A DNA stretch of 63,249 nucleotides, counting the filler, from Platydemus manokwari (Eukaryota), in assembly GCA_037951405.1 (NCBI GenBank). It is 5 parts of 5 records of this genome, joined end to end, with 100 filler letters (N's around TTAATTAATTAA, not from the genome) between each part and the next. Parts side by side here need not be neighbours in the genome. Positions count along the whole stretch, not along the records: positions 49,973 to 63,249 come from JBBMOY011771395.1; 4 more parts are not named here. One strand, 5' to 3'. The notes below the pieces were generated by a model. It searched no databases. It saw only the letters and a program-made list of their open reading frames with translations, and was not told where the DNA came from. Position 1 is the stretch's first letter, and each line of letters opens with the position of its first letter. Of the stretch, positions 53,595 through 63,249 are shown piece after piece. Position numbers and translations under genes: made by a program.

Positions 53595-55620
53595 TTCTCT
53601 AATATCCTCATTTGATGACAAAACTTGGAATGAAGATGATGGGATAAAAACTAAACCTTGGTTTAACCACTGTAAATAATAATCATAATCTAAGTCACTT
53701 GGGGCTGATCCAGACCTAAATTCATCAAGTTTCGAATAGAATTTTGAGGTAGGATACTCATTTTCATTTTCATTAGAAGAATCATCGATAATTTTTTTAA
53801 ATAAAATTTGAAGGAAATTCATTAAAGTGATCTCCATTCAAAACTTTGTGTATTATAGATCTAAGTAATTTTCTAAAAATAACTTCTTAAGATCATCATA
53901 ACTAAAAGTCTAATAATTTATTAAAAATCATAAATTCCAAAAGAATATCTTTTGTGGGCTTATGTAGAAATATATTACTAATAAATAAATTTATTTCGAA
54001 CACGAAATCAGATTCTTGAATTGTTTTGTCTTCATACATCTTTGCAATTTTTTGTTTTCTACGAAATTTTTCTTCAAAAGTAAAATCACCACCTACTCCA
54101 ATGTTCGATTTTTTACTATTCGAAAAACAATACCAATCTGTTGGATGTAAATTATAATTATATTTTACATATTTTTCATAATTTTTAGGAAGGTCATCCT
54201 TAAAAATTATATTGTCAAAAATATAACAAGTGGAATAATTTTTTGTACCTTTTTGCAAAAGACATTCGGTAGTCATTTTTTATTTATTGTTTTCACCTTT
54301 ATAAAACTAAACTAATGCTTTTAAATCAGAAATGATTTCTGATAACTTATTGATTTCTGTTCTATCTTTAACTTTTAAAATATAATCTTTAATTGATTTA
54401 TTTAATTTGTCACTAAATTGAAATCTAAAATAATTTGCCATGATTTCAACAAATTCTCCTTCAGTTTTTGCTTCTATAAATTTAATGTTTAATTTGATCA
54501 GATATTAATTTTATTTCAGCTTTACTTATTTTTGTATTTTTTTTCTATTATTTTAATAATTGAATTATACAGTGATTGAATCAATACTTTCTGTGTTTTT
54601 AGTAATTGATTTTTCATTATTTGTAAATTATCCTTTTGTAGACGCGAGTCTTCTACTTGATGCTGATAAATGAATTCTTTTTATTAATGTTGATGATTTC
54701 ATTTTCTAAATATGATTTAATATCATCAACATATTGTTTATTTAAACCATCTGTTAGAATTTCAGGATTTCCTGAATCGGTTATTTTATGATTCCTCATC
54801 CCTAAATCACCCTTCATAAAATCACTTTTCTCATTAATATATTTTTTATCATAGGTTCTTTCATTAGTATTCATCTTATTTTGTACATCTTTCATGTTAT
54901 TTTTTGAACTGTTATTAAATTTGTGAACCAAGTCAAACATTTTTTGAAGTATAAAAAAGTAATGTATACGATTGAAGATGATTTCTCATATCATTAATAA
55001 TGTAATCAAATTTTAATCAGTTGCCTAAACAATACAAAAAAATTGTCCACATAATACAAAATTGTCCACATAATTCTCTTTCGGTTTGTATTTGAAAAAT
55101 TTTATAAACAAAGTTTTCACCTTGAAAAAATTATAATCCTCTTTGGCTGGTAAAATTCCATAAGAATCGAAATAAATATTATGACGTTTACTGATTGGAA
55201 GAAATATAATTTATCAATACCGTGTTTAACCGCTTCACAAACTTCACATTAAATTTTTTCTTTTTACTACTTAATGCAAGATGAAATGATTTTCCAATAA
55301 CAGATTTTCCAATAAATAAACTAACTCGTACCTCATAATATAAAGTAAATACTGGAAAAATTGATAATACATTCAAAACCCCTAAAGATATTATATTTTA
55401 ATTGAATATTTTAGACCACTATCCACTTTTGTATATTTATTTTTTAACTTCCTATAATGACTTAATAATTATTATAAAACTCATTTTTTCATAAAATTTT
55501 CAATTCTAAGATTGTTAATGTTTACTTTTAATGTATCATTTTCATAACCTAGATTATTGGTTATTGGTTCGTTAAGTTTAAGAATTATTCCTATTGTTCG
55601 TTTTTAGATATTGCTTACAA
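53595..55620 (-). mobile_element. Maverick/virus-like segment B; 53683-54247 duplicates 50527-51079
   Basis: Near-identical ORFs to segment A (TKNYSTCYIFDNIIFKDDLPKN; FYSKLDEFRSGSAPSDLDY); fibre/stalk-like motif MKGDLGMRNHKITDSGNPEILTDGLNKQYVDD at 54653-54940. Confidence 0.6.
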
Positions 55621-56295
55621 TATTTTAGAGGGAAATGCAATATGTGATCTATCTGTGATATATTTGTTTTTAAAGGGCATCAATAACGAAATTTGAAGAC
55701 CACTTTTCAGTATATATATAATGACATGTTCCTAAGTTTGTAAAACTTTATTTCGATTATGTACGATTATTATTTAATTCTATGAAATTATTTACTTATA
55801 TCATACCATATATGAAGACATGGACCTGATCAAGAATCCATGGAAAAGTATTCACAAAATTAACAATTTGGAACACAATAAATACCAAGTTAAAGTCCCT
55901 AAATTCCTTGAATTTTATTTGATTCTTACTGTTTAATTAATTATTTGAAGTTTCAACGAACGATTATATTGTTGTTTAATTAAAAATTAATTATCATTGG
56001 TTCATTTTTTCTTTAATTCATTTTGTTTAACTAAAGCATTATAATCATTTATTTGTATAATTTATATTTTCAAGTATTTTGAAATTCTACAACTATGTTA
56101 AAATATGAATTACAAAAAATTATTAATTAATTTAATTATAAATTATTTTATTTATATTTATATTTACTATGCTCATATTGATCCGTTTATTGCCACTATT
56201 TATTATTTCTTGAATAACAATATAATATTACTTCAGATTTATAATAAGAATAACTTAAGTATTTTAGAAAATTCACTTTGTAATTCAGAGTTCCA

Positions 56296-58038
56296 ATGCA
56301 CATAATTATTGAAACTGTTGATGGAAAAGTAATTACATTGAACGTGTGTTCATCCACAAATGTCCAGGAACTGAATTTACAAATTCAACAAAAAATTGGA
56401 ATCAAACCAGATGAACAAAAGTTAGTGTTTCAAGGAACAACATTAAATGCTGAAAGTACTTTAGAGGAAAATGGAATATGTGATCGCTCTGTGATATATT
56501 TGCTTAAGTTTGTTAGGTAATTATATGGTTTGAGATGATTTGAAATTCAATAATTTGATACAACAGAATTGGTTGGATACAAATATTCATTAAGATTGTT
56601 AATGAGGAGATGTTTTTGTTGGAAATAGAAGAATATATGACTGTCATGGAACTGAAATTGAAAATTGCGTATAAAATGGGATTCAAACCGAAAACACAAA
56701 TATTATCATTTCAAGGAGGAGATTTAAGAGATGAGTGTACTCTGGAGGATTACAGAATATCCGATCAGTCTGTGATCAGTTTGGCTGTCGAATCAAGGCA
56801 ATGATTTGATTTGAGATGATTTGTCTTTCAATAATTGTGCATTTTAGAGGTGGTGCGATGGAAATATTTATTGAAACAATGGATGGAAAACAATTTGTAA
56901 TGCAAATGTGCAAGCTGGATAAGGTTCGAGAACTGAAATATAAAATTGAAAATAAAATCAAAGCCAGTCCACATGATCAAAAATTAGTTTTTAAAGGCGG
57001 AATATTAAAGGATGACGGGCGCACATTGGGTGAATGCGGAATACGCAATAAGTCTGTGATAAATGTGGTCACGAGATCAACGTGATTTTATGGTTTGCGA
57101 TGATTTATTGATTGGTTACAGACATGGTATTGGCATGATACATCACGGAAAGCGTGGTTTTTCAGCCTCTCGAAGATTTGATTATTCTATGAATGATCGC
57201 GGACGGGATGTTTTATTGAATGATCAGAGATTCGATCACAGACGTATTCGCATCATTGTCAAAAACAGCGATGAAAAAAGAAGAGTTTCAAATGCGCACG
57301 TATGATACGGTTGAAGATTTGAAATTGAAAATCCGAGACAAAATTGGAATTCTACCGGCAAACCAAATATTAACATATCAAGAAGGAGCATTGGAATTTT
57401 CAAATTTATCACAAATTCATTATTTATTTTATAATTGAGAGAATAATTATAAAATAAATAATGAATTTGTGATAAATTTGAAAATTCCAGAGAAGTAATG
57501 ATTTTGATAATTTGATGTTTTATAACTTATAAATGCAGACCTGAATGGATAAAAGTAATTATTAAAATGATGAATGAAACTCCTTTCCGTTGGAATTATT
57601 AAAATCCGTGAAAGTCTCGGAAATAAAATTGAAAATTGAAGAAAAGATTGGATTTACACCAGATGAACAAAGATTGTTGTTCGGAGGTAAAATATTAGAC
57701 AGTGATGAATGCACATTGAGTCAGTGCGGAATACAAGATGACTTTGAGATAACTGTGGTTATCAGATTGGGGTGATTTTATTGTTTGAGATGATTTACGT
57801 TTCAATAATTGATTGGTGCAGATTTGATATAGTTATCAAACAAATGAATGGAGAAACTATAATGGTTAATGCTTCTATAAAACCAAAAATACGAGATATA
57901 AAATTGAAAATTGAAGAGAAATTGAAAATAAGCGCAGATGAGCAACAGTTAAGATTCAATGATGCGATTCTAGAGGATAAGAGAAGATTACGTGATTATA
58001 ATATTGATGAGAAATGTGTCATCGATTTGATTTCCTAA
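56296..58038 (+). CDS. Multi-ubiquitin-like protein, six diverged UBL domains on six exons (two apparent frameshifts and one palindromic insertion; may be a pseudogene)
   Basis: UBL1 MHIIIETVDGKVITLNV..V.EL..QIQQKIGIKPDEQKLVFQG..L....TLEENGI.DRSVIYL, with five further UBL repeats. Short introns at 56517-56566, 56798-56847 (GC-AG), 57082-57121, ~57495-57538 and 57772-57821; phase 2 where checkable. Confidence 0.85.
57392..57489. repeat. Perfect 45-bp-arm palindrome (8-nt loop) replacing the end of UBL4
   Basis: 57392-57436 is the exact reverse complement of 57445-57489. Confidence 0.95.
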
Positions 58039-58869
58039 AGGTATTCGTGAATCCAATCTATATACTTAACAATGAATTATATTTATATATCACTGAATTT
58101 AAATTTTAAAAATCACTTTGTCATTTATCGATTTCTAGTGATTGATATGGCTCATAAAATGCAAGTACACAACAACAATTTCAAAACATCTTGTCTTTAT
58201 TATATTTTATGTTATGTATTATGTGCTATGAATTGCTATAGAATTGATGAGATAAATATAAAACAATAGTGAAGCATGCCAAATGATGACAGAATAATAA
58301 AGACGTAATAATCAATAACAAAATGGATTCATTTTACAAATGTTTAATATATAGCTATTATATTGCATATATTAGGAATTTAAAATTAAAACAAATAAAT
58401 AGAATTATAAAATGTATTTACAAACTGTTATGGAAAATATACTTTCAATTAAATACAGATTTAAGAACTTGATGAACAGTCTCAATATATATTATGTACT
58501 CATCATTTTAGTCAGATTACTTGCCACTTGCCATTTTCTTTGACATGTGTGTCAGTAATTATCTGACATTTATGTAGATTTACAAAAATTGATAAAAAAA
58601 TTGTTCTCTTTTATTGGTCACATTCAATTTTGATAATACGGTTCTTGGTCTAAGATAAAGATTTGAGGCAGAATCAAAATAAATGACTAAAGTTTTAAAA
58701 TACATCATTTAACGTAAAATTATTTACTCAAAACCGTGCTGGAATTCCTTATCGATGTTCAGTCGCGTGTAGAATTCCCACCATCTCGATGACCCAATTA
58801 TTGCTTCATTAGCTGATTGTCAGCTCCGCCTTGATTTTCTGTTTTCTAGCTTCGACCGACCTTCAAAAT

Positions 58870-61800
58870 CAAACTAACCACAATTTTTATTTTTTGAAAA
58901 TATAAATTTCTTATAATTTAAACCCCATCAATTAGTTAAAAACATTTCGAATGCTACAACTGACTGATTTAATTATAATAATAATTTGTTTTAATTTAAG
59001 AAAAGTTTAACTTCTAAATCTATAAATTTATAAGTTATTTTTTTAGTTTGGTAAACTTCTTTAATAATGTAGATGTTTCTTGAAAATTTATGGTTTTTTC
59101 TTTGAGAAATATTATAACTTTTAAAATTTTTTTAGATTTTTTATATTCATGAGTTAAGAAATCATTACTGTATAACATTGTATATATATGTAGGGATTGG
59201 ATTATTTCGTAAAATAAATTTTATTATTTAATTAACATTTGTATTTTTAATAATCTTGTTTTGTTTTTCATCAATTGCTTTTAAATTTTGATTCGTAACT
59301 AACAAACGCTTATTTATATTTTCCTGTTTTCCCTCAATAGCTTTTAATTTTACATATCCTCCTAACTAACTCTTATTTTCATCATCAATAGCTAATTGTT
59401 GTTTGCTTTGATTTTCAGTAACTGGTTTTAGTAATAGTTTAAAAAATTCCGCAATACCTTGATTTATTAAAATCTTTGAATATTGTTTTTCTTCAGATTC
59501 TGTGTTTAATTTTTTTTAAATCTATAATCTTTCTTCAATCCTTTTTTTATATCAAAACTGTTCATTTCTTCATATAAAATTTGAGATGATTAAAGTAACA
59601 TAAGTTACATAAACCTATATTACTTGCTCCTAGTCTCGGGTCACAAGCACACTCAAATTTGTTTTTCTGATCAGGGTATCTAATATTTATATCTATCACC
59701 GACAACTCATCGTCAGTATAAACATCGTATCGAATTTTATTTGGATCCATTTTTATAAATCTTTATTTAAAATATTCTTTATTTTTGTAATGTCAGGGTA
59801 TAACTCAAGGGTATATGAAAATGTTTTTTTTTATTTTTAAATAGATGACACAACCCGTAAAACCTCACCGGATATGAAATTAAAAAACTTTAAACCATTA
59901 TCTATTTTACTCCATTTATTTTTAATTTACTATAATATTTACTTTTAATGTATCGTTGTCATAACCAAGATAATATGGACTCATATTTGGAGCATCTGAT
60001 GTAGCACTTAAAATTATCAAGGTTGGGATAAAGTTTTATCAGTCAATATAAACTCCAATTGACTTACTATTTGATGGTCTATCAGGAAAAATAATTCCAC
60101 CAAATAAATTAATTTCATGTGGAGTATTAAATTCTTTAAGAAATCAATTATTTAAATCAATTTATTTAACCCAATATCTGATGATTTATTAAATCCATAA
60201 ATTACTAATCTAGGATTAATACTCAAGACATATTTTTTTCATATAAGGAAAAGAACATTTATCAATACATATATATTATCTACACCATAATTATTTTCCA
60301 GAAAAACAGTTCCACCTTTTATTCCAATAGAAATTCCTTTTTACCAAGATATTTAAAAAAACTACAAAATAAATTTATAAATTTTATACCTCCAACCACT
60401 CGATTAAATTCTGGTTCATAAGTAAAATTAACACGAATTCCTATATTTTTATATTTGCCATTATATTATTCCCAAAAACAATACCACTAATTTACATCGG
60501 ATTTTTTTGTTACCTATCTTAAGATATTTTCCAAGATGTTTAGATGGATTATCATTAATTGATTCAGATTTTATTTGTTTTTCTGATTTCTTATTCAAAA
60601 TTATTTTTAATTTCTTCAATACATTTTTAAAGATATTTCTCATTTACACATGAAAATCATTTTCTGGATTTCTTAACGTTGTTATTTTGTAAATGTTAAA
60701 TCATACATTACCCCTCATACAATTTTCTTCCTTATTAATATATTTTCTATCATGAATTTGTTCTCTAGCATTAATCATTTCTTGAACATCGCTTATATTG
60801 TTTAATGAAAAATTTTTAAATTTTTATATTATCAAAAACTTTTATCTGTTATTGAACAGTTAACATTTATTACCTTAAGCTCAGATGAAGTAATATAAAA
60901 GTTAGTTAATTAGTTAAATATAATTAATAAATAGTGTTTTGATAACTGTTCCTAAATTTTTTACTCATTAACCTATTGCCAAGGTTTTGTGTGTTTACCA
61001 TTTTTTTCAATGTATTTTTCATCATCAAATAGGGTTATTCCATATTTTCTTATTAATAATAATATATTTTATTTTATATATTTATAAAAAATAAATTTAA
61101 TCTTATATAAAATTAAATTTGAATTAAAACTTTAATTCATTTAAATATCTCACAATAGATGTAAAAAGATATTACTTGATTATTATAATAATTGAATCAT
61201 ATAAATTTTTAAAAATGAATTTCTGTGCGTACCTTTCCTTTTTATATGAATCCCTTTTGTTTTCCAAAAATTTGAAATAACCCACCAATAGATTTGTTGA
61301 TATTCATGGTTTTTCCAAATATTTCGAAATAACCCACCAATAAATTTATTGATGTTTATGTTCTTCACAAAAAAATATTTTTAAATTCTCAATTTTTTTC
61401 TAACTATAATAATGATAATAATAATATTTATAATAATAATATTAATAATATTGATAATAATAATGATAATAACAATGATAATAATAATAATAATTCTACA
61501 TACAAACTCGGTGAGTGGAGAAATTTTCAACGAACATACTCAGTGTCTCGATAATTTCAAATTTAATCGATAACGATTTGCATGTTTTGAAAATCGTTAA
61601 CATGATTGTGTGTTATGCTATTGTTTAAGTGAATTTGAATCGAGCACATATTTGGAAGGGTATTGAGAAGTGTTTTGAAGGGGTTTCGAGCCTGAATTAA
61701 ATAAAATTTATAACTTTTGATTTACTGAACTGATTTTATTAAATTATATATCAAATTGATGGGAATTCAATGGGGAAATTAAATAAGAACATTTACATAT

Positions 61801-62040
61801 AAATTTCCGAATTCTAGTAAATTCCAATTGCCATTAAGCTTGAATAAATCTTCTAACTTTTGTGGAAAATCTTATTAATTAAATGTTCCCTTGATTTTTT
61901 ATGAGAGATTAATCCTCTTTTATTTTTAAAATATTTATTACACACTTCAAAATGAAATTCAAAATTGGGTTCATTCATTTTTAATGAATAATTTTTAATT
62001 AGAAAGTATTTTATTACTTTAATATCTAATAAAAACACAG
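58870..62040 (-). mobile_element. Maverick/large-DNA-virus-like segment C (degenerate)
   Basis: Packed Lys/Asn/Ile-rich intronless ORF remnants; RPB1-clamp-like ORF at 59562-59750; C2H2-like F(H)FEVCNKYFKNKRGLISHKKSREH at 61853-62038; LGY(D/E)NDTLKVNI repeat shared with segment B. Confidence 0.5.
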
Positions 62041-62299
62041 AAATTACATTTAATTAACTTTGTTTATGCATGGAGTAGAAGGAAAATGAAGGGACTGGCT
62101 CGGATTAGGGGTGGGTCTGGGCTAGAACCCTCATTTTCCGTCTTCTAATGAAGGACAAAATGTTTCTAATAGCTAAGATTCAGAAAATAGTATGAAGATA
62201 TAAAAATTTATTAAGATTTTCTAGGAATACACTCCTCAACAATTCTGAACTATTATTTATTTAAGAGATTTAATAAAAAACTGAAAAACTGAAAGACTA

Positions 62300-63060
62300 T
62301 TTTTGATGAGAACGAAGTACTTACTCAAAAAGTTTTGAGAGCAATAAATGTACACTTAAAAAATATTGTTAGCCCATCTAAAAATGAGTTGAAGATCTGA
62401 TCTTAAAGGTCATAGGTGATTCTAGTACTTTAGTTTAAATTTTCATAATAAAATTGTTGAGCAAATTAGATTAAAATATTTATAAATTTGTACATGAAAT
62501 TAAAAAAGATCTTTGTGTGATTAAACCATCAACAAAAGCAACAAATTTAAATAAATCTGCTGATAGTGTTTGTGAATCTTAGTAAACTTCAACTCCTTTA
62601 GATATTTGTAATAGTTTTTCAGAATATGAAATAGGCATGTTGATCATAAAGTAACTTAAGAAAATAATTTCTCTCCAAATTTATTTAATTCGTTAAGATT
62701 AATTACTTGAAATAATGACTTTGATTCCAACATTTCATAGACCAGATGTTTACCTTCTTCCAACCAAAATGGAATTCTACGAGGTTTAACGGCTATTGGT
62801 TAATCAATGTTTGTTTTCATACTATATTTCACGATCTCGCATTTTTCTAAGCCCTTTGGGCCTATACTAAAACTATTTCTATATTTCGATAGAACTCTCA
62901 TAACATTGTTCTTATCCTCAGGATTCAGTTTATCACCTATGTTCAATGATTTTTGATATTCATCTAGCATATTTTCTCTCTTTTTGAAATATAAATTATA
63001 CAACTCAACTGAATTCCCAATGCTGTCCTCGTTTATTTCTTCTATCCAACCTAGATTCAT
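62300..63060 (-). mobile_element. Ty3/Gypsy pol pseudogene (pre-RT and RT N-terminus)
   Basis: LNPEDKNNVMRVLSKYRNSFS...LEKCEIVKYSMKT...PIAVKPRRIPFWLEE...EMLESKVII is typical of the Gypsy RT start. Confidence 0.8.
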
Positions 63061-63249
63061 TCCAATATAAATTTAAATATAAAATTAACATAAGAAAATT
63101 TATTTATTTATTTATTCATTGTCAAACAATTTATTATAGAAATAATCAATATTTAATTGTAAGTGTTAGTTGCTAGCACTTTTTCATTTTTTATAATGAA
63201 TTGAATAGTTGTAATTTCCTAAAACACAAATATAAAATTACAATTAATA

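What the first reader, a model, noticed from the sequence alone, without database searches (positions are those of the whole stretch)
56296..58038. Six-domain, hyper-diverged multi-ubiquitin gene built by tandem duplication of an exon+intron unit
Seen: six beta-grasp UBL repeats, each on its own exon, separated by 40-50 nt introns at the equivalent position. Most introns share the sequence gt(g/a)attttat.gtttgagatgattt...tcaataattg...ag, so the intron was duplicated along with the domain. The repeats differ strongly from each other and from ubiquitin. Only the UBL2/UBL3 junction keeps RGG, and the protein ends DLIS with no di-glycine. Established: canonical polyubiquitin is near-invariant and ends each unit in LRGG, whereas diverged tandem UBLs (ISG15, FAT10, OASL) are typically immune-related. 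Inference: a lineage-specific, fast-evolving multi-UBL family, possibly a defence or decoy factor, given its position among virus-like sequence.
Basis: partly seen in the sequence, partly recalled or inferred. Interest (0 to 1): 0.8.

Follow-up and report, generated by a model that had tools for sequence, protein, structure and literature searches.

The report
Broken six-repeat ubiquitin-like gene
A gene built from six diverged ubiquitin-like repeats, one per exon, is really there, but as assembled it is broken after the third repeat, so it looks like a recently decayed copy of a lineage-specific ubiquitin-array gene, with no evidence that it is a defence factor.

Summary
The six ubiquitin-fold repeats at 56296-58038 (+) are real. 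Five pass Pfam's ubiquitin cut-off. A model of unit 1 superposes on ubiquitin at TM 0.98. The five 40-50 nt introns all lie in phase 2 at the same codon, so the repeat arose by tandem duplication of an exon+intron unit.

Exon 4 carries a +1 frameshift in an A6 run. It also carries a perfect 45-nt inverted duplication with an in-frame TGA beside it. Exon 5 carries a -1 frameshift. Intron 2 has a GC donor. As assembled, the ORF stops after 289 aa, which covers three UBLs plus a tail. Two older relics of the same gene and several segmental duplicates lie nearby.

The units are 35-42% identical to ubiquitin and 27-45% to each other. Codon-position identities (2 > 1 > 3, third positions near saturation) indicate old duplications with the fold under purifying selection, not demonstrated hyper-evolution.

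No close relative was found in any search, but proteins of about 140-450 aa were not covered. Diverged multi-UBL arrays are common in public data. Nothing supports a defence role.

One oddity remains: the intron core GTTTGAGATGATTT is better conserved than any exon segment.

The parts
56296..56516 (+). Exon 1: start codon and UBL unit 1, intact
   Evidence: Pfam PF00240 at 53.1 bits. AlphaFold pLDDT 93.8, TM 0.98 to ubiquitin. Open frame.
56517..56566 (+). Intron 1, 50 nt, GT-AG, phase 2. Carries both conserved motifs.
56567..56797 (+). Exon 2: UBL unit 2, intact. Its tail ..ESR joins GG at the start of exon 3.
   Evidence: Pfam 52.6 bits. Spliced translation.
56798..56847 (+). Intron 2, 50 nt, GC donor with AG acceptor. 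Carries both conserved motifs. If it is retained, a stop follows at once.
56848..57081 (+). Exon 3: UBL unit 3, intact and the best preserved
   Evidence: Pfam 68.1 bits. Best solved-structure match is ubiquitin.
57082..57121 (+). Intron 3, 40 nt. It is 10 nt shorter than intron 5 and lacks the TTCAATAATT motif. An alternative acceptor at 57240-57241 would give a 160-nt intron.
57122..57494 (+). Exon 4, broken. It has a 41-aa stretch with no UBL match and then UBL unit 4. U4 has a +1 frameshift in the A6 run at about 57273-57278. The first stop in the spliced frame is TGA 57303-57305.
   Evidence: Length 373 nt = 1 mod 3. Frames. Pfam only 23.4 bits. Nucleotide alignment to U2 and U3.
57392..57489 (+). 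Perfect foldback inside U4. The right arm (57445-57489) is native U4 coding sequence. The left arm (57392-57436) is its inverted copy. An in-frame TGA lies at 57436-57438, at the left arm/spacer boundary.
   Evidence: I1, 100% complementary; D3 shows the right arm is homologous to the other units. dG -55.8 kcal/mol. Stop.
57495..57538 (+). Intron 4, 44 nt, GT-AG, with diverged motifs
57539..57771 (+). Exon 5, broken: UBL unit 5 with a -1 frameshift near 57580-57583. Each side is open in its own frame.
   Evidence: Length 233 nt = 2 mod 3. Frames. Pfam 58.0 bits for the part after the break.
57772..57821 (+). Intron 5, 50 nt, GT-AG. Carries both conserved motifs.
57822..58038 (+). Exon 6: UBL unit 6, intact. 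It ends ..DLIS then TAA and has no Gly-Gly.
   Evidence: Pfam 49.0 bits..
51078..51400 (+). Old relic of the 3' end of a paralogous copy (a U5/U3-like unit fused to the end of U6), with several stops
   Evidence: tblastn and blastn. Frames.
55612..55669 (+). Relic of the C-terminal part of a U1-like unit, 84% identical to 56448-56505
58045..58864 (+). 3' flank of the gene, duplicated at 52685-53597 (87-89% identity) without a UBL gene in front of that copy

Best explanation
This is a duplicated, intron-containing copy of a lineage-specific poly-UBL gene that descends from a polyubiquitin-type array. In this assembly it is recently disabled.

Shown:
- An ancestral exon+intron unit was duplicated in tandem to six units. 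The unit comprised one ubiquitin fold plus a phase-2 intron in the codon that aligns with ubiquitin R74.
- The units then diverged over a long time while the fold core was kept.
- Nearly all Gly-Gly junctions and most surface residues that ubiquitin uses were lost. These include the lysines, I44 and H68.

Inferred:
- The intact protein would have been a fixed chain of UBL domains. It could not be cut by deubiquitinases or activated by E1, so it would have acted as a ubiquitin-domain adaptor or scaffold.

Shown:
- The present copy has three or four lesions: a +1 shift, a foldback duplication with a stop beside it, a -1 shift and a GC donor.
- It lies in a patchwork of segmental duplicates that also holds two older relics of the same gene.

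Inferred:
- The locus evolves by birth and death. This copy is a young pseudogene, or at best encodes a truncated three-UBL protein.
For: - Six PF00240 units and a ubiquitin-like model. The closest solved structure by sequence is ubiquitin itself.
- All introns share phase and position, and they share motifs.
- Exon lengths are 373 and 233 nt. The first stop comes after 289 aa, and 11 stops lie between the two shifts.
- There is a perfect inverted duplication with a TGA beside it.
- Every unit is still free of stops in its own ancestral frame. Random windows of 62 or 71 codons from this piece are open only 1.8% and 0.8% of the time. So the lesions are few and young.
- The relics at 51078-51400 and 55612-55669 and the duplicated flanks at 87-91% identity show repeated duplication and decay.
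- Codon-position identities of 2 > 1 > 3 and the invariant core residues show past purifying selection on the fold.
Against: - Both frameshifts lie in or beside short homopolymers, and they cancel each other (the six-exon CDS is 1509 nt, 0 mod 3). A perfect 45-nt foldback can also be an amplification or assembly artefact. All of the lesions could therefore be errors of this assembly.
- No reads, transcripts or second assembly were available.
- All exons are symmetric (phase 2-2). Skipping exons 4 and 5 would give an open 300-aa four-UBL product, so the locus need not be dead.
- The source organism is unknown, and genome-wide paralogues could not be counted.
Confidence: 0.5

Rival explanations
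1. The gene is intact in the organism, and the lesions are artefacts of this assembly. The artefacts would be indels at short homopolymers plus a foldback chimera. The real product would be a roughly 490-aa chain of six diverged UBLs that is neither cleavable nor conjugatable.
For: - The +1 shift sits in an A6 run, and the -1 shift sits beside CC/TTT runs.
- The two shifts cancel.
- Units 4-6 have no stops in their ancestral frames apart from the TGA beside the foldback.
- The foldback arms are 100% identical, while the units are only 47-62% identical in nucleotides.
Against: - The foldback is not a simple insertion. Net unit length is +25 to +28 nt, and part of U4 is missing. That fits a real template-switch mutation.
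- The second shift is not in a long homopolymer.
- Intron 2 has a GC donor, and intron 3 has lost 10 nt that include the second motif.
- The locus demonstrably contains decayed copies.
Confidence: 0.25
2. The locus still makes a shorter working protein. This would be either the 289-aa product (three UBLs plus a 61-aa tail) or a 300-aa four-UBL isoform (U1-U2-U3-U6) made by skipping the two damaged exons, which are frame-neutral when skipped together.
For: - Exons 1-3 and exon 6 are intact and score well.
- All introns are in phase 2, and the exon-skipped CDS is open to the native TAA.
Against: - There is no expression evidence.
- A stop in exon 4 followed by two introns would normally mark the full-length mRNA for nonsense-mediated decay (established knowledge, not tested here).
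- Nothing indicates regulated skipping.
Confidence: 0.15
3. One reading: a fast-evolving multi-UBL defence or decoy factor, analogous to ISG15, FAT10 or OASL, that is maintained by conflict with viruses.
For: - The surface residues of the units differ strongly while the core is kept.
- The locus is duplicated and turns over.
- No close relatives were found.
Against: - Codon-position pattern gives no sign of accelerated protein evolution, and synonymous sites are saturated, so dN/dS cannot be measured.
- There is no C-terminal GG for conjugation.
- The neighbours gave no significant viral or defence-family hit.
- The gene is broken as assembled.
- Diverged multi-UBL arrays are widespread and are not known as immune genes.
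Confidence: 0.07

Closest known systems
Canonical polyubiquitin genes (UBB/UBC type)
   Same: Both have head-to-tail ubiquitin-fold units in one gene. Ubiquitin is the best sequence and structure match for the units. One junction still reads RGG followed by a new unit.
   Different: The units are only 35-42% identical to ubiquitin and 27-45% to each other. Five of the six unit ends lack Gly-Gly. Every unit is separated by an intron. The ubiquitin lysines and the I44 patch are mostly replaced.
Diverged multi-UBL array proteins in public genomes and metagenomes (for example P0001, P0003, P0004, P0011 from Pseudo-nitzschia, P0081)
   Same: Both are long chains of diverged ubiquitin-fold repeats, 30-70% identical to ubiquitin. 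In P0001 the first three unit junctions inspected have no Gly-Gly.
   Different: Those arrays have 7-26 units. The two loci examined are uninterrupted ORFs with no introns. None is closer than 40-47% per domain to the units here, so they are analogues and not shown to be orthologues.
ISG15 / FAT10 (tandem di-UBL modifiers) and the UBL pair of OASL
   Same: All have tandem diverged ubiquitin folds on one chain.
   Different: Those have two UBLs, and ISG15 and FAT10 end in Gly-Gly for conjugation (established knowledge). Here there are six units and no terminal Gly-Gly. The top solved-structure matches, by sequence and by fold, were all ubiquitin.
Unprocessed (duplicative) pseudogenes in tandem gene clusters that evolve by birth and death
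   Same: The introns are retained. There are frameshifts and a stop. Older relics and duplicated flanks lie in the same 13 kb.
   Different: There are very few lesions, and every unit is still open in its own frame. Death of the gene is therefore recent, or only apparent.

Membership tests
Ubiquitin family / beta-grasp fold (Pfam PF00240) | Domain HMM score above the curated cut-off (25.4 bits) | tested here: met
   U1 53.1, U2 52.6, U3 68.1, U5 58.0 and U6 49.0 bits. U4 scores 23.4 bits, below the cut-off, because it is disrupted.
Ubiquitin family / beta-grasp fold (Pfam PF00240) | beta-beta-alpha-beta-beta fold that superposes on ubiquitin | tested here: met
   The U1 model has pLDDT 93.8. 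Foldseek against the PDB gives TM 0.98 and rmsd 0.5 A to ubiquitin. Only U1 was modelled.
Canonical polyubiquitin | Near-identical repeats that encode ubiquitin | tested here: not met
   35-42% identity to ubiquitin and 27-45% between units.
Canonical polyubiquitin | LRGG at the end of every unit, directly followed by the next unit, so that deubiquitinases release monomers | tested here: not met
   Only the U2/U3 junction has RGG (..ESRGG|AMEIF..), and R72 and L73 are replaced there. The other junctions read FVR-IGW, RST-HGIG.., PEK-PEW and RLG-F. Cleavage itself was not testable.
Canonical polyubiquitin | Intact open reading frame across all units | tested here: not met
   The first stop comes after 289 aa. 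There are two frameshifts and a foldback with a stop beside it.
Conjugatable (type 1) ubiquitin-like modifiers such as ISG15, FAT10 and NEDD8 | C-terminal Gly-Gly, exposed or exposable | tested here: not met
   The last unit ends ..VIDLIS followed by TAA.
Immune tandem-UBL proteins (ISG15 / FAT10 / OASL) | Induction by infection or interferon-like signalling, or linkage to immune genes | not testable with these tools
   No expression data. The neighbours gave no significant hit to viral or defence-related families.
Unprocessed pseudogene | Retained introns plus disabling lesions relative to the ancestral frame | tested here: inconclusive
   The lesions are present in this assembly. They cannot be told apart from assembly error without reads.
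Introner-type (transposing) introns | Near-identical introns at non-homologous positions in many genes | tested here: not met
   All five introns are at the homologous codon and phase. The core motif occurs with at most one mismatch at six places in the window: four in this gene and two elsewhere, of which one is on the opposite strand. The combined motif gave only two chance hits in metagenome contigs and none in viral contigs.

The most novel reading that the evidence does not exclude
The gene is intact in the organism (the lesions are assembly errors), and it belongs to an undescribed family of UBL chains that are neither cleavable nor conjugatable. All exons are symmetric phase 2-2 cassettes. 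The introns carry a selected core element (GTTTGAGATGATTT) that is more conserved than any exon segment. This element would control cassette skipping, so that one gene yields UBL chains of different length and composition.
Probability: 0.06. Interest if true: 0.6.

Novelty: new member of a known kind. Interest (0 to 1): 0.25.

Why it matters
If the reading given here is right, the finding is a modest one. It is a clean example of how a polyubiquitin-type array can escape concerted evolution. The array acquired one intron per repeat, lost its processing sites, diverged into a fixed multi-UBL chain and then decayed by birth and death.

It also warns against treating domain arrays read by eye as intact genes.

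The only feature that might repay follow-up is the intron core that outlasts the coding sequence. It could be a splicing element for very short introns, or it could be a trace of short-tract gene conversion.

Tried and rejected
- **Alternative genetic codes** (tables 4, 6, 10). With table 6, ORFs open in every frame simply because the DNA is AT-rich. In their own frames the intact units (U1-U3, U6 and the parts of U5) have no in-frame TAA, TAG or TGA, so they offer no sign of stop-codon reassignment. I kept the standard code.
- **Rescue of exon 4 by other splice sites.** An acceptor at 57240-57241 shortens the linker but still runs into the frameshift. An acceptor at 57226-57227 enters the later frame but reads the first strand of U4 out of its ancestral frame. 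A GC..AG 'intron' across the left foldback arm is possible on paper but contrived. None of these is supported.
- **RNA structure or a known RNA in the introns.** Fold energies are within the shuffle range. There is no Rfam family and no tRNA in the piece.
- **Relatives.**
  - Word search with U3, with the neighbour ORF and with the six-unit profile gave nothing. The one unrelated 38-bit hit, P0153, came from a Logan contig.
  - The viral contig scans by protein and by intron motif were blank.
  - The metagenome scan with the intron motif gave two hits at 45-48% GC with no UBL, so they are chance matches.
- **Two-unit (di-UBL) periodicity.** Introns 1, 3 and 5 share one kind of start, and introns 2 and 4 share another. 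U2 groups with U4, and U1 with U3. The identity matrix is weak, though: odd-odd 0.40, even-even 0.33, odd-even 0.35. I leave this as a hint only.
- **Source organism.** It could not be identified. Nothing in the piece looked human. No N was filled in.
- **Literature searches.** Three searches found nothing describing this kind of gene.

Full report
**What is there.**
- The piece (49973-63249) has about 25% G+C.
- At 56296-58038 on the + strand, the repeat finder gives a six-copy family with spacing of 281, 281, 386, 304 and 275 nt (D2).
- Translated in their own frames, all six units match Pfam PF00240. U1 scores 53.1, U2 52.6, U3 68.1, U5 58.0 and U6 49.0 bits against a cut-off of 25.4. U4 scores only 23.4.
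- By sequence, the nearest solved structure to U3 is ubiquitin itself.
- An AlphaFold model of U1, built with the six-unit alignment, has pLDDT 93.8. It superposes on ubiquitin at TM 0.98 and rmsd 0.5 A.
- The beta-grasp repeats are therefore real and far beyond chance.

**Gene model.**

| Feature | Coordinates | Notes |
|---|---|---|
| Exon 1 | 56296-56516 | |
| Intron 1 | 56517-56566 | 50 nt, GT-AG |
| Exon 2 | 56567-56797 | |
| Intron 2 | 56798-56847 | 50 nt, GC-AG |
| Exon 3 | 56848-57081 | |
| Intron 3 | 57082-57121 | 40 nt |
| Exon 4 | 57122-57494 | |
| Intron 4 | 57495-57538 | 44 nt |
| Exon 5 | 57539-57771 | |
| Intron 5 | 57772-57821 | 50 nt |
| Exon 6 | 57822-58038 | ends DLIS, TAA |

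- Every intron splits a codon after its second base. That codon aligns with R74 of ubiquitin.
- The start of each following exon holds what is left of the Gly-Gly: GGA in exon 3 and IGW, HGIG and PEW elsewhere.
- Introns 1, 2 and 5 share TTTGAGATGATTT, four variable bases, then TTCAATAATT.
- Intron 3 has one mismatch in the first motif and is 10 nt shorter, lacking the second motif. Intron 4 is diverged.

- Exons 2 and 3 are 231 and 234 nt. Exon 4 is 373 nt (1 mod 3) and exon 5 is 233 nt (2 mod 3).
- In exon 4 the first strand of U4 (IRIIVKNSDE) is in one frame and the rest (KEEFQMRTYDTVEDLKLKIRDKIG..) is in the next. The switch lies in an A6 run at about 57273-57278.
- Further on, U4 holds a perfect 45-nt inverted repeat, 57392-57436 / 57445-57489, with an 8-nt spacer (I1; dG -55.8).
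- The right arm is native. It is homologous to the C-terminal coding part of the other units (D3) and reads NYKINNEFVINLKIPE. The left arm is its inverted copy and replaces part of U4. An in-frame TGA lies at the left arm/spacer boundary.
- In exon 5 the frame shifts by -1 near 57580-57583.
- With the exons joined, the first stop comes after 289 aa. That product covers three intact UBLs, a 41-aa stretch with no UBL match, the first strand of U4 and an out-of-frame tail.
- Eleven stops lie between the two shifts.
- The two shifts cancel (CDS 1509 nt, 0 mod 3), so exon 6 is back in frame.
- Intron 2 has a GC donor. If it is not spliced, a stop follows at once.

**Are the lesions real?**
- I cannot tell. 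Both shifts lie in or beside short homopolymers, and a perfect foldback can be an artefact.
- Against a pure artefact, the foldback is combined with loss of native sequence.
- Intron 3 has lost 10 nt that include the second motif, and intron 2 has a GC donor.
- The same 13 kb holds clearly dead relics of the gene. A fused U5/U3-like plus U6-end fragment with several stops lies at 51078-51400. A U1 C-terminal fragment lies at 55612-55669.
- The flanks are duplicated as well. 58045-58864 matches 52685-53597 at 87-89%. 50527-51078 matches 53683-54247 at 91%.
- On the other side, every unit of the main copy is still free of stops in its own ancestral frame. Random windows of 62 or 71 codons from this piece are open only 1.8% and 0.8% of the time.
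- The damage is therefore either very recent or not real.
- My estimates are a young pseudogene or truncated gene at about 0.5, an intact gene with assembly errors at about 0.25, and a shorter working product at about 0.15. The shorter product includes the open 300-aa U1-U2-U3-U6 isoform made by exon skipping.

**How diverged, and how fast?**
- The units are 35-42% identical to ubiquitin and 27-45% to each other.
- Ubiquitin core positions I30, L43, F45, L50, L56 and I61 are invariant. The surface positions used by the ubiquitin system (I44, K48, K63, H68) are mostly replaced.
- Between units, nucleotide identity is 0.62-0.75 at second, 0.45-0.66 at first and 0.35-0.59 at third codon positions.
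- Synonymous sites are close to saturation and the fold has been under purifying selection. This is the pattern of old duplicates. It does not show hyper-evolution, and dN/dS between units cannot be measured.
- The copies of the whole gene differ far less than the units do (84-89% in the relic fragments). The six-unit structure therefore predates the segmental duplications.

**An oddity.**
- In an alignment of the exon+intron units, the best-conserved 15-nt window of the whole repeat lies in the intron. GTTTGAGATGATTT has mean pairwise identity 0.89. The exon maximum is 0.79, in the helix-coding ..CTGAAATTGAAAATT.. segment.
- The introns do not fold better than shuffles, and nothing in Rfam matches.
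- Outside the four introns, the core has two one-mismatch matches in the piece, at 52290-52302 on the opposite strand and at 59580-59592.
- The cause is either selection on an intronic splicing element of these very short introns or short-tract gene conversion. This is unresolved.

**Relatives.**
- A profile of the six units was searched against 1.84 billion representative proteins. It gave 36,190 hits at E <= 0.001.
- The top 150 are true polyubiquitins (about 70 bits per unit) and many diverged multi-UBL arrays with 7-26 units at 30-70% identity to ubiquitin. One of these is from the diatom Pseudo-nitzschia, and others are labelled 'ubiquitin C' by their source.
- None is closer than 40-47% per domain to the units here.
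- In a domain tree the six units do not form one clean clade. Only U1 with U3 and U2 with U4 pair up.
- Two of the arrays that I looked up are intronless ORFs on large eukaryote-like contigs.
- The word searches, viral scans and a metagenome scan with the intron motif found no kin.
- Blind spot: proteins of roughly 140-450 aa with two to five units would fall outside both the length window of the word search and the top-150 list. 'No close relatives' is therefore not proven.
- The source organism could not be identified. The neighbour ORF had no homologue. Nothing looked human.

**Function.**
- The ancestral intact protein had no Gly-Gly at its end and only one RGG junction, in which R72 and L73 are replaced.
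- It could not be processed into monomers or conjugated. It would have been a fixed chain of distinct UBL surfaces, that is, a ubiquitin-domain adaptor or scaffold. This is inference.
The neighbouring ORFs gave no significant viral or defence-family match, and ISG15-type features are absent.

**Verdict.**
- This is a new member of a known kind: a diverged polyubiquitin-derived multi-UBL gene, here probably a young pseudogene in a birth-and-death cluster.
- Its gene structure is unusual, with one UBL per exon.
- Interest is low to moderate, at 0.25.
- General background on ubiquitin conservation and polyubiquitin organisation is taken from the abstract of PMC10457151 as listed. Statements about ISG15, FAT10, OASL and nonsense-mediated decay rest on established knowledge and were not tested here.

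Noticed in passing
window 50415-51191 (-) and 53484-54276 (-): Two paralogous copies (91% identical in DNA) of an orphan gene lie next to the UBL copies. Both keep an in-frame TGA between ..YTKF and MEI... There was no Pfam, PHROG or database homologue.
   Followed up: partly
window 55028-55210 (-): This ORF has the pattern ..YFDSYG.. and ..CGQFFC... From memory, it recalls the His/Glu/Cys region of adenain- or Polinton-type cysteine proteases (clan CE, which includes deubiquitinases). Pfam and the solved-structure search gave no hit, so this is unsupported.
   Followed up: partly
window 49973-50284 (-), cut by the piece's edge: The ORF ends ..YLGCSIDKLERWIEYQFNENMSWDN. From memory, this resembles the region just before the catalytic motif of HNH endonucleases of phages and giant viruses. 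There was no significant Pfam or PHROG hit.
   Followed up: partly
window 61856-62038 (-): A short ORF has a C2H2 zinc finger of the dsRNA-binding JAZ type (PF12171, 24.3 bits, just above the cut-off).
   Followed up: no
window 62803-63072 (-): From memory, this ORF resembles the stretch upstream of the protease or reverse transcriptase of LTR retroelements. There was no Pfam or PHROG hit.
   Followed up: partly
window 61333-61551 (+): A low-complexity Asn/Asp-rich (AAT/GAT) tract.
   Followed up: no
L005 / L006 2001-4838 (+) and L004 2001-4022 (+): Public eukaryote-like contigs carry intronless ORFs of 945 and 673 aa made of diverged UBL repeats (12 and 9 units). In L005 and L006 the gene is followed by a protein kinase gene and a Death-domain gene. 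Such arrays are numerous among the top hits but seem little described.
   Followed up: partly
window 56268-56285 and 58108-58125: An 18-nt direct repeat (AAAATTCACTTTGTAATT / AAAAATCACTTTGTCATT) brackets the UBL gene. A similar motif follows the relic at about 51420. It may mark the boundaries of the duplicated segment.
   Followed up: no
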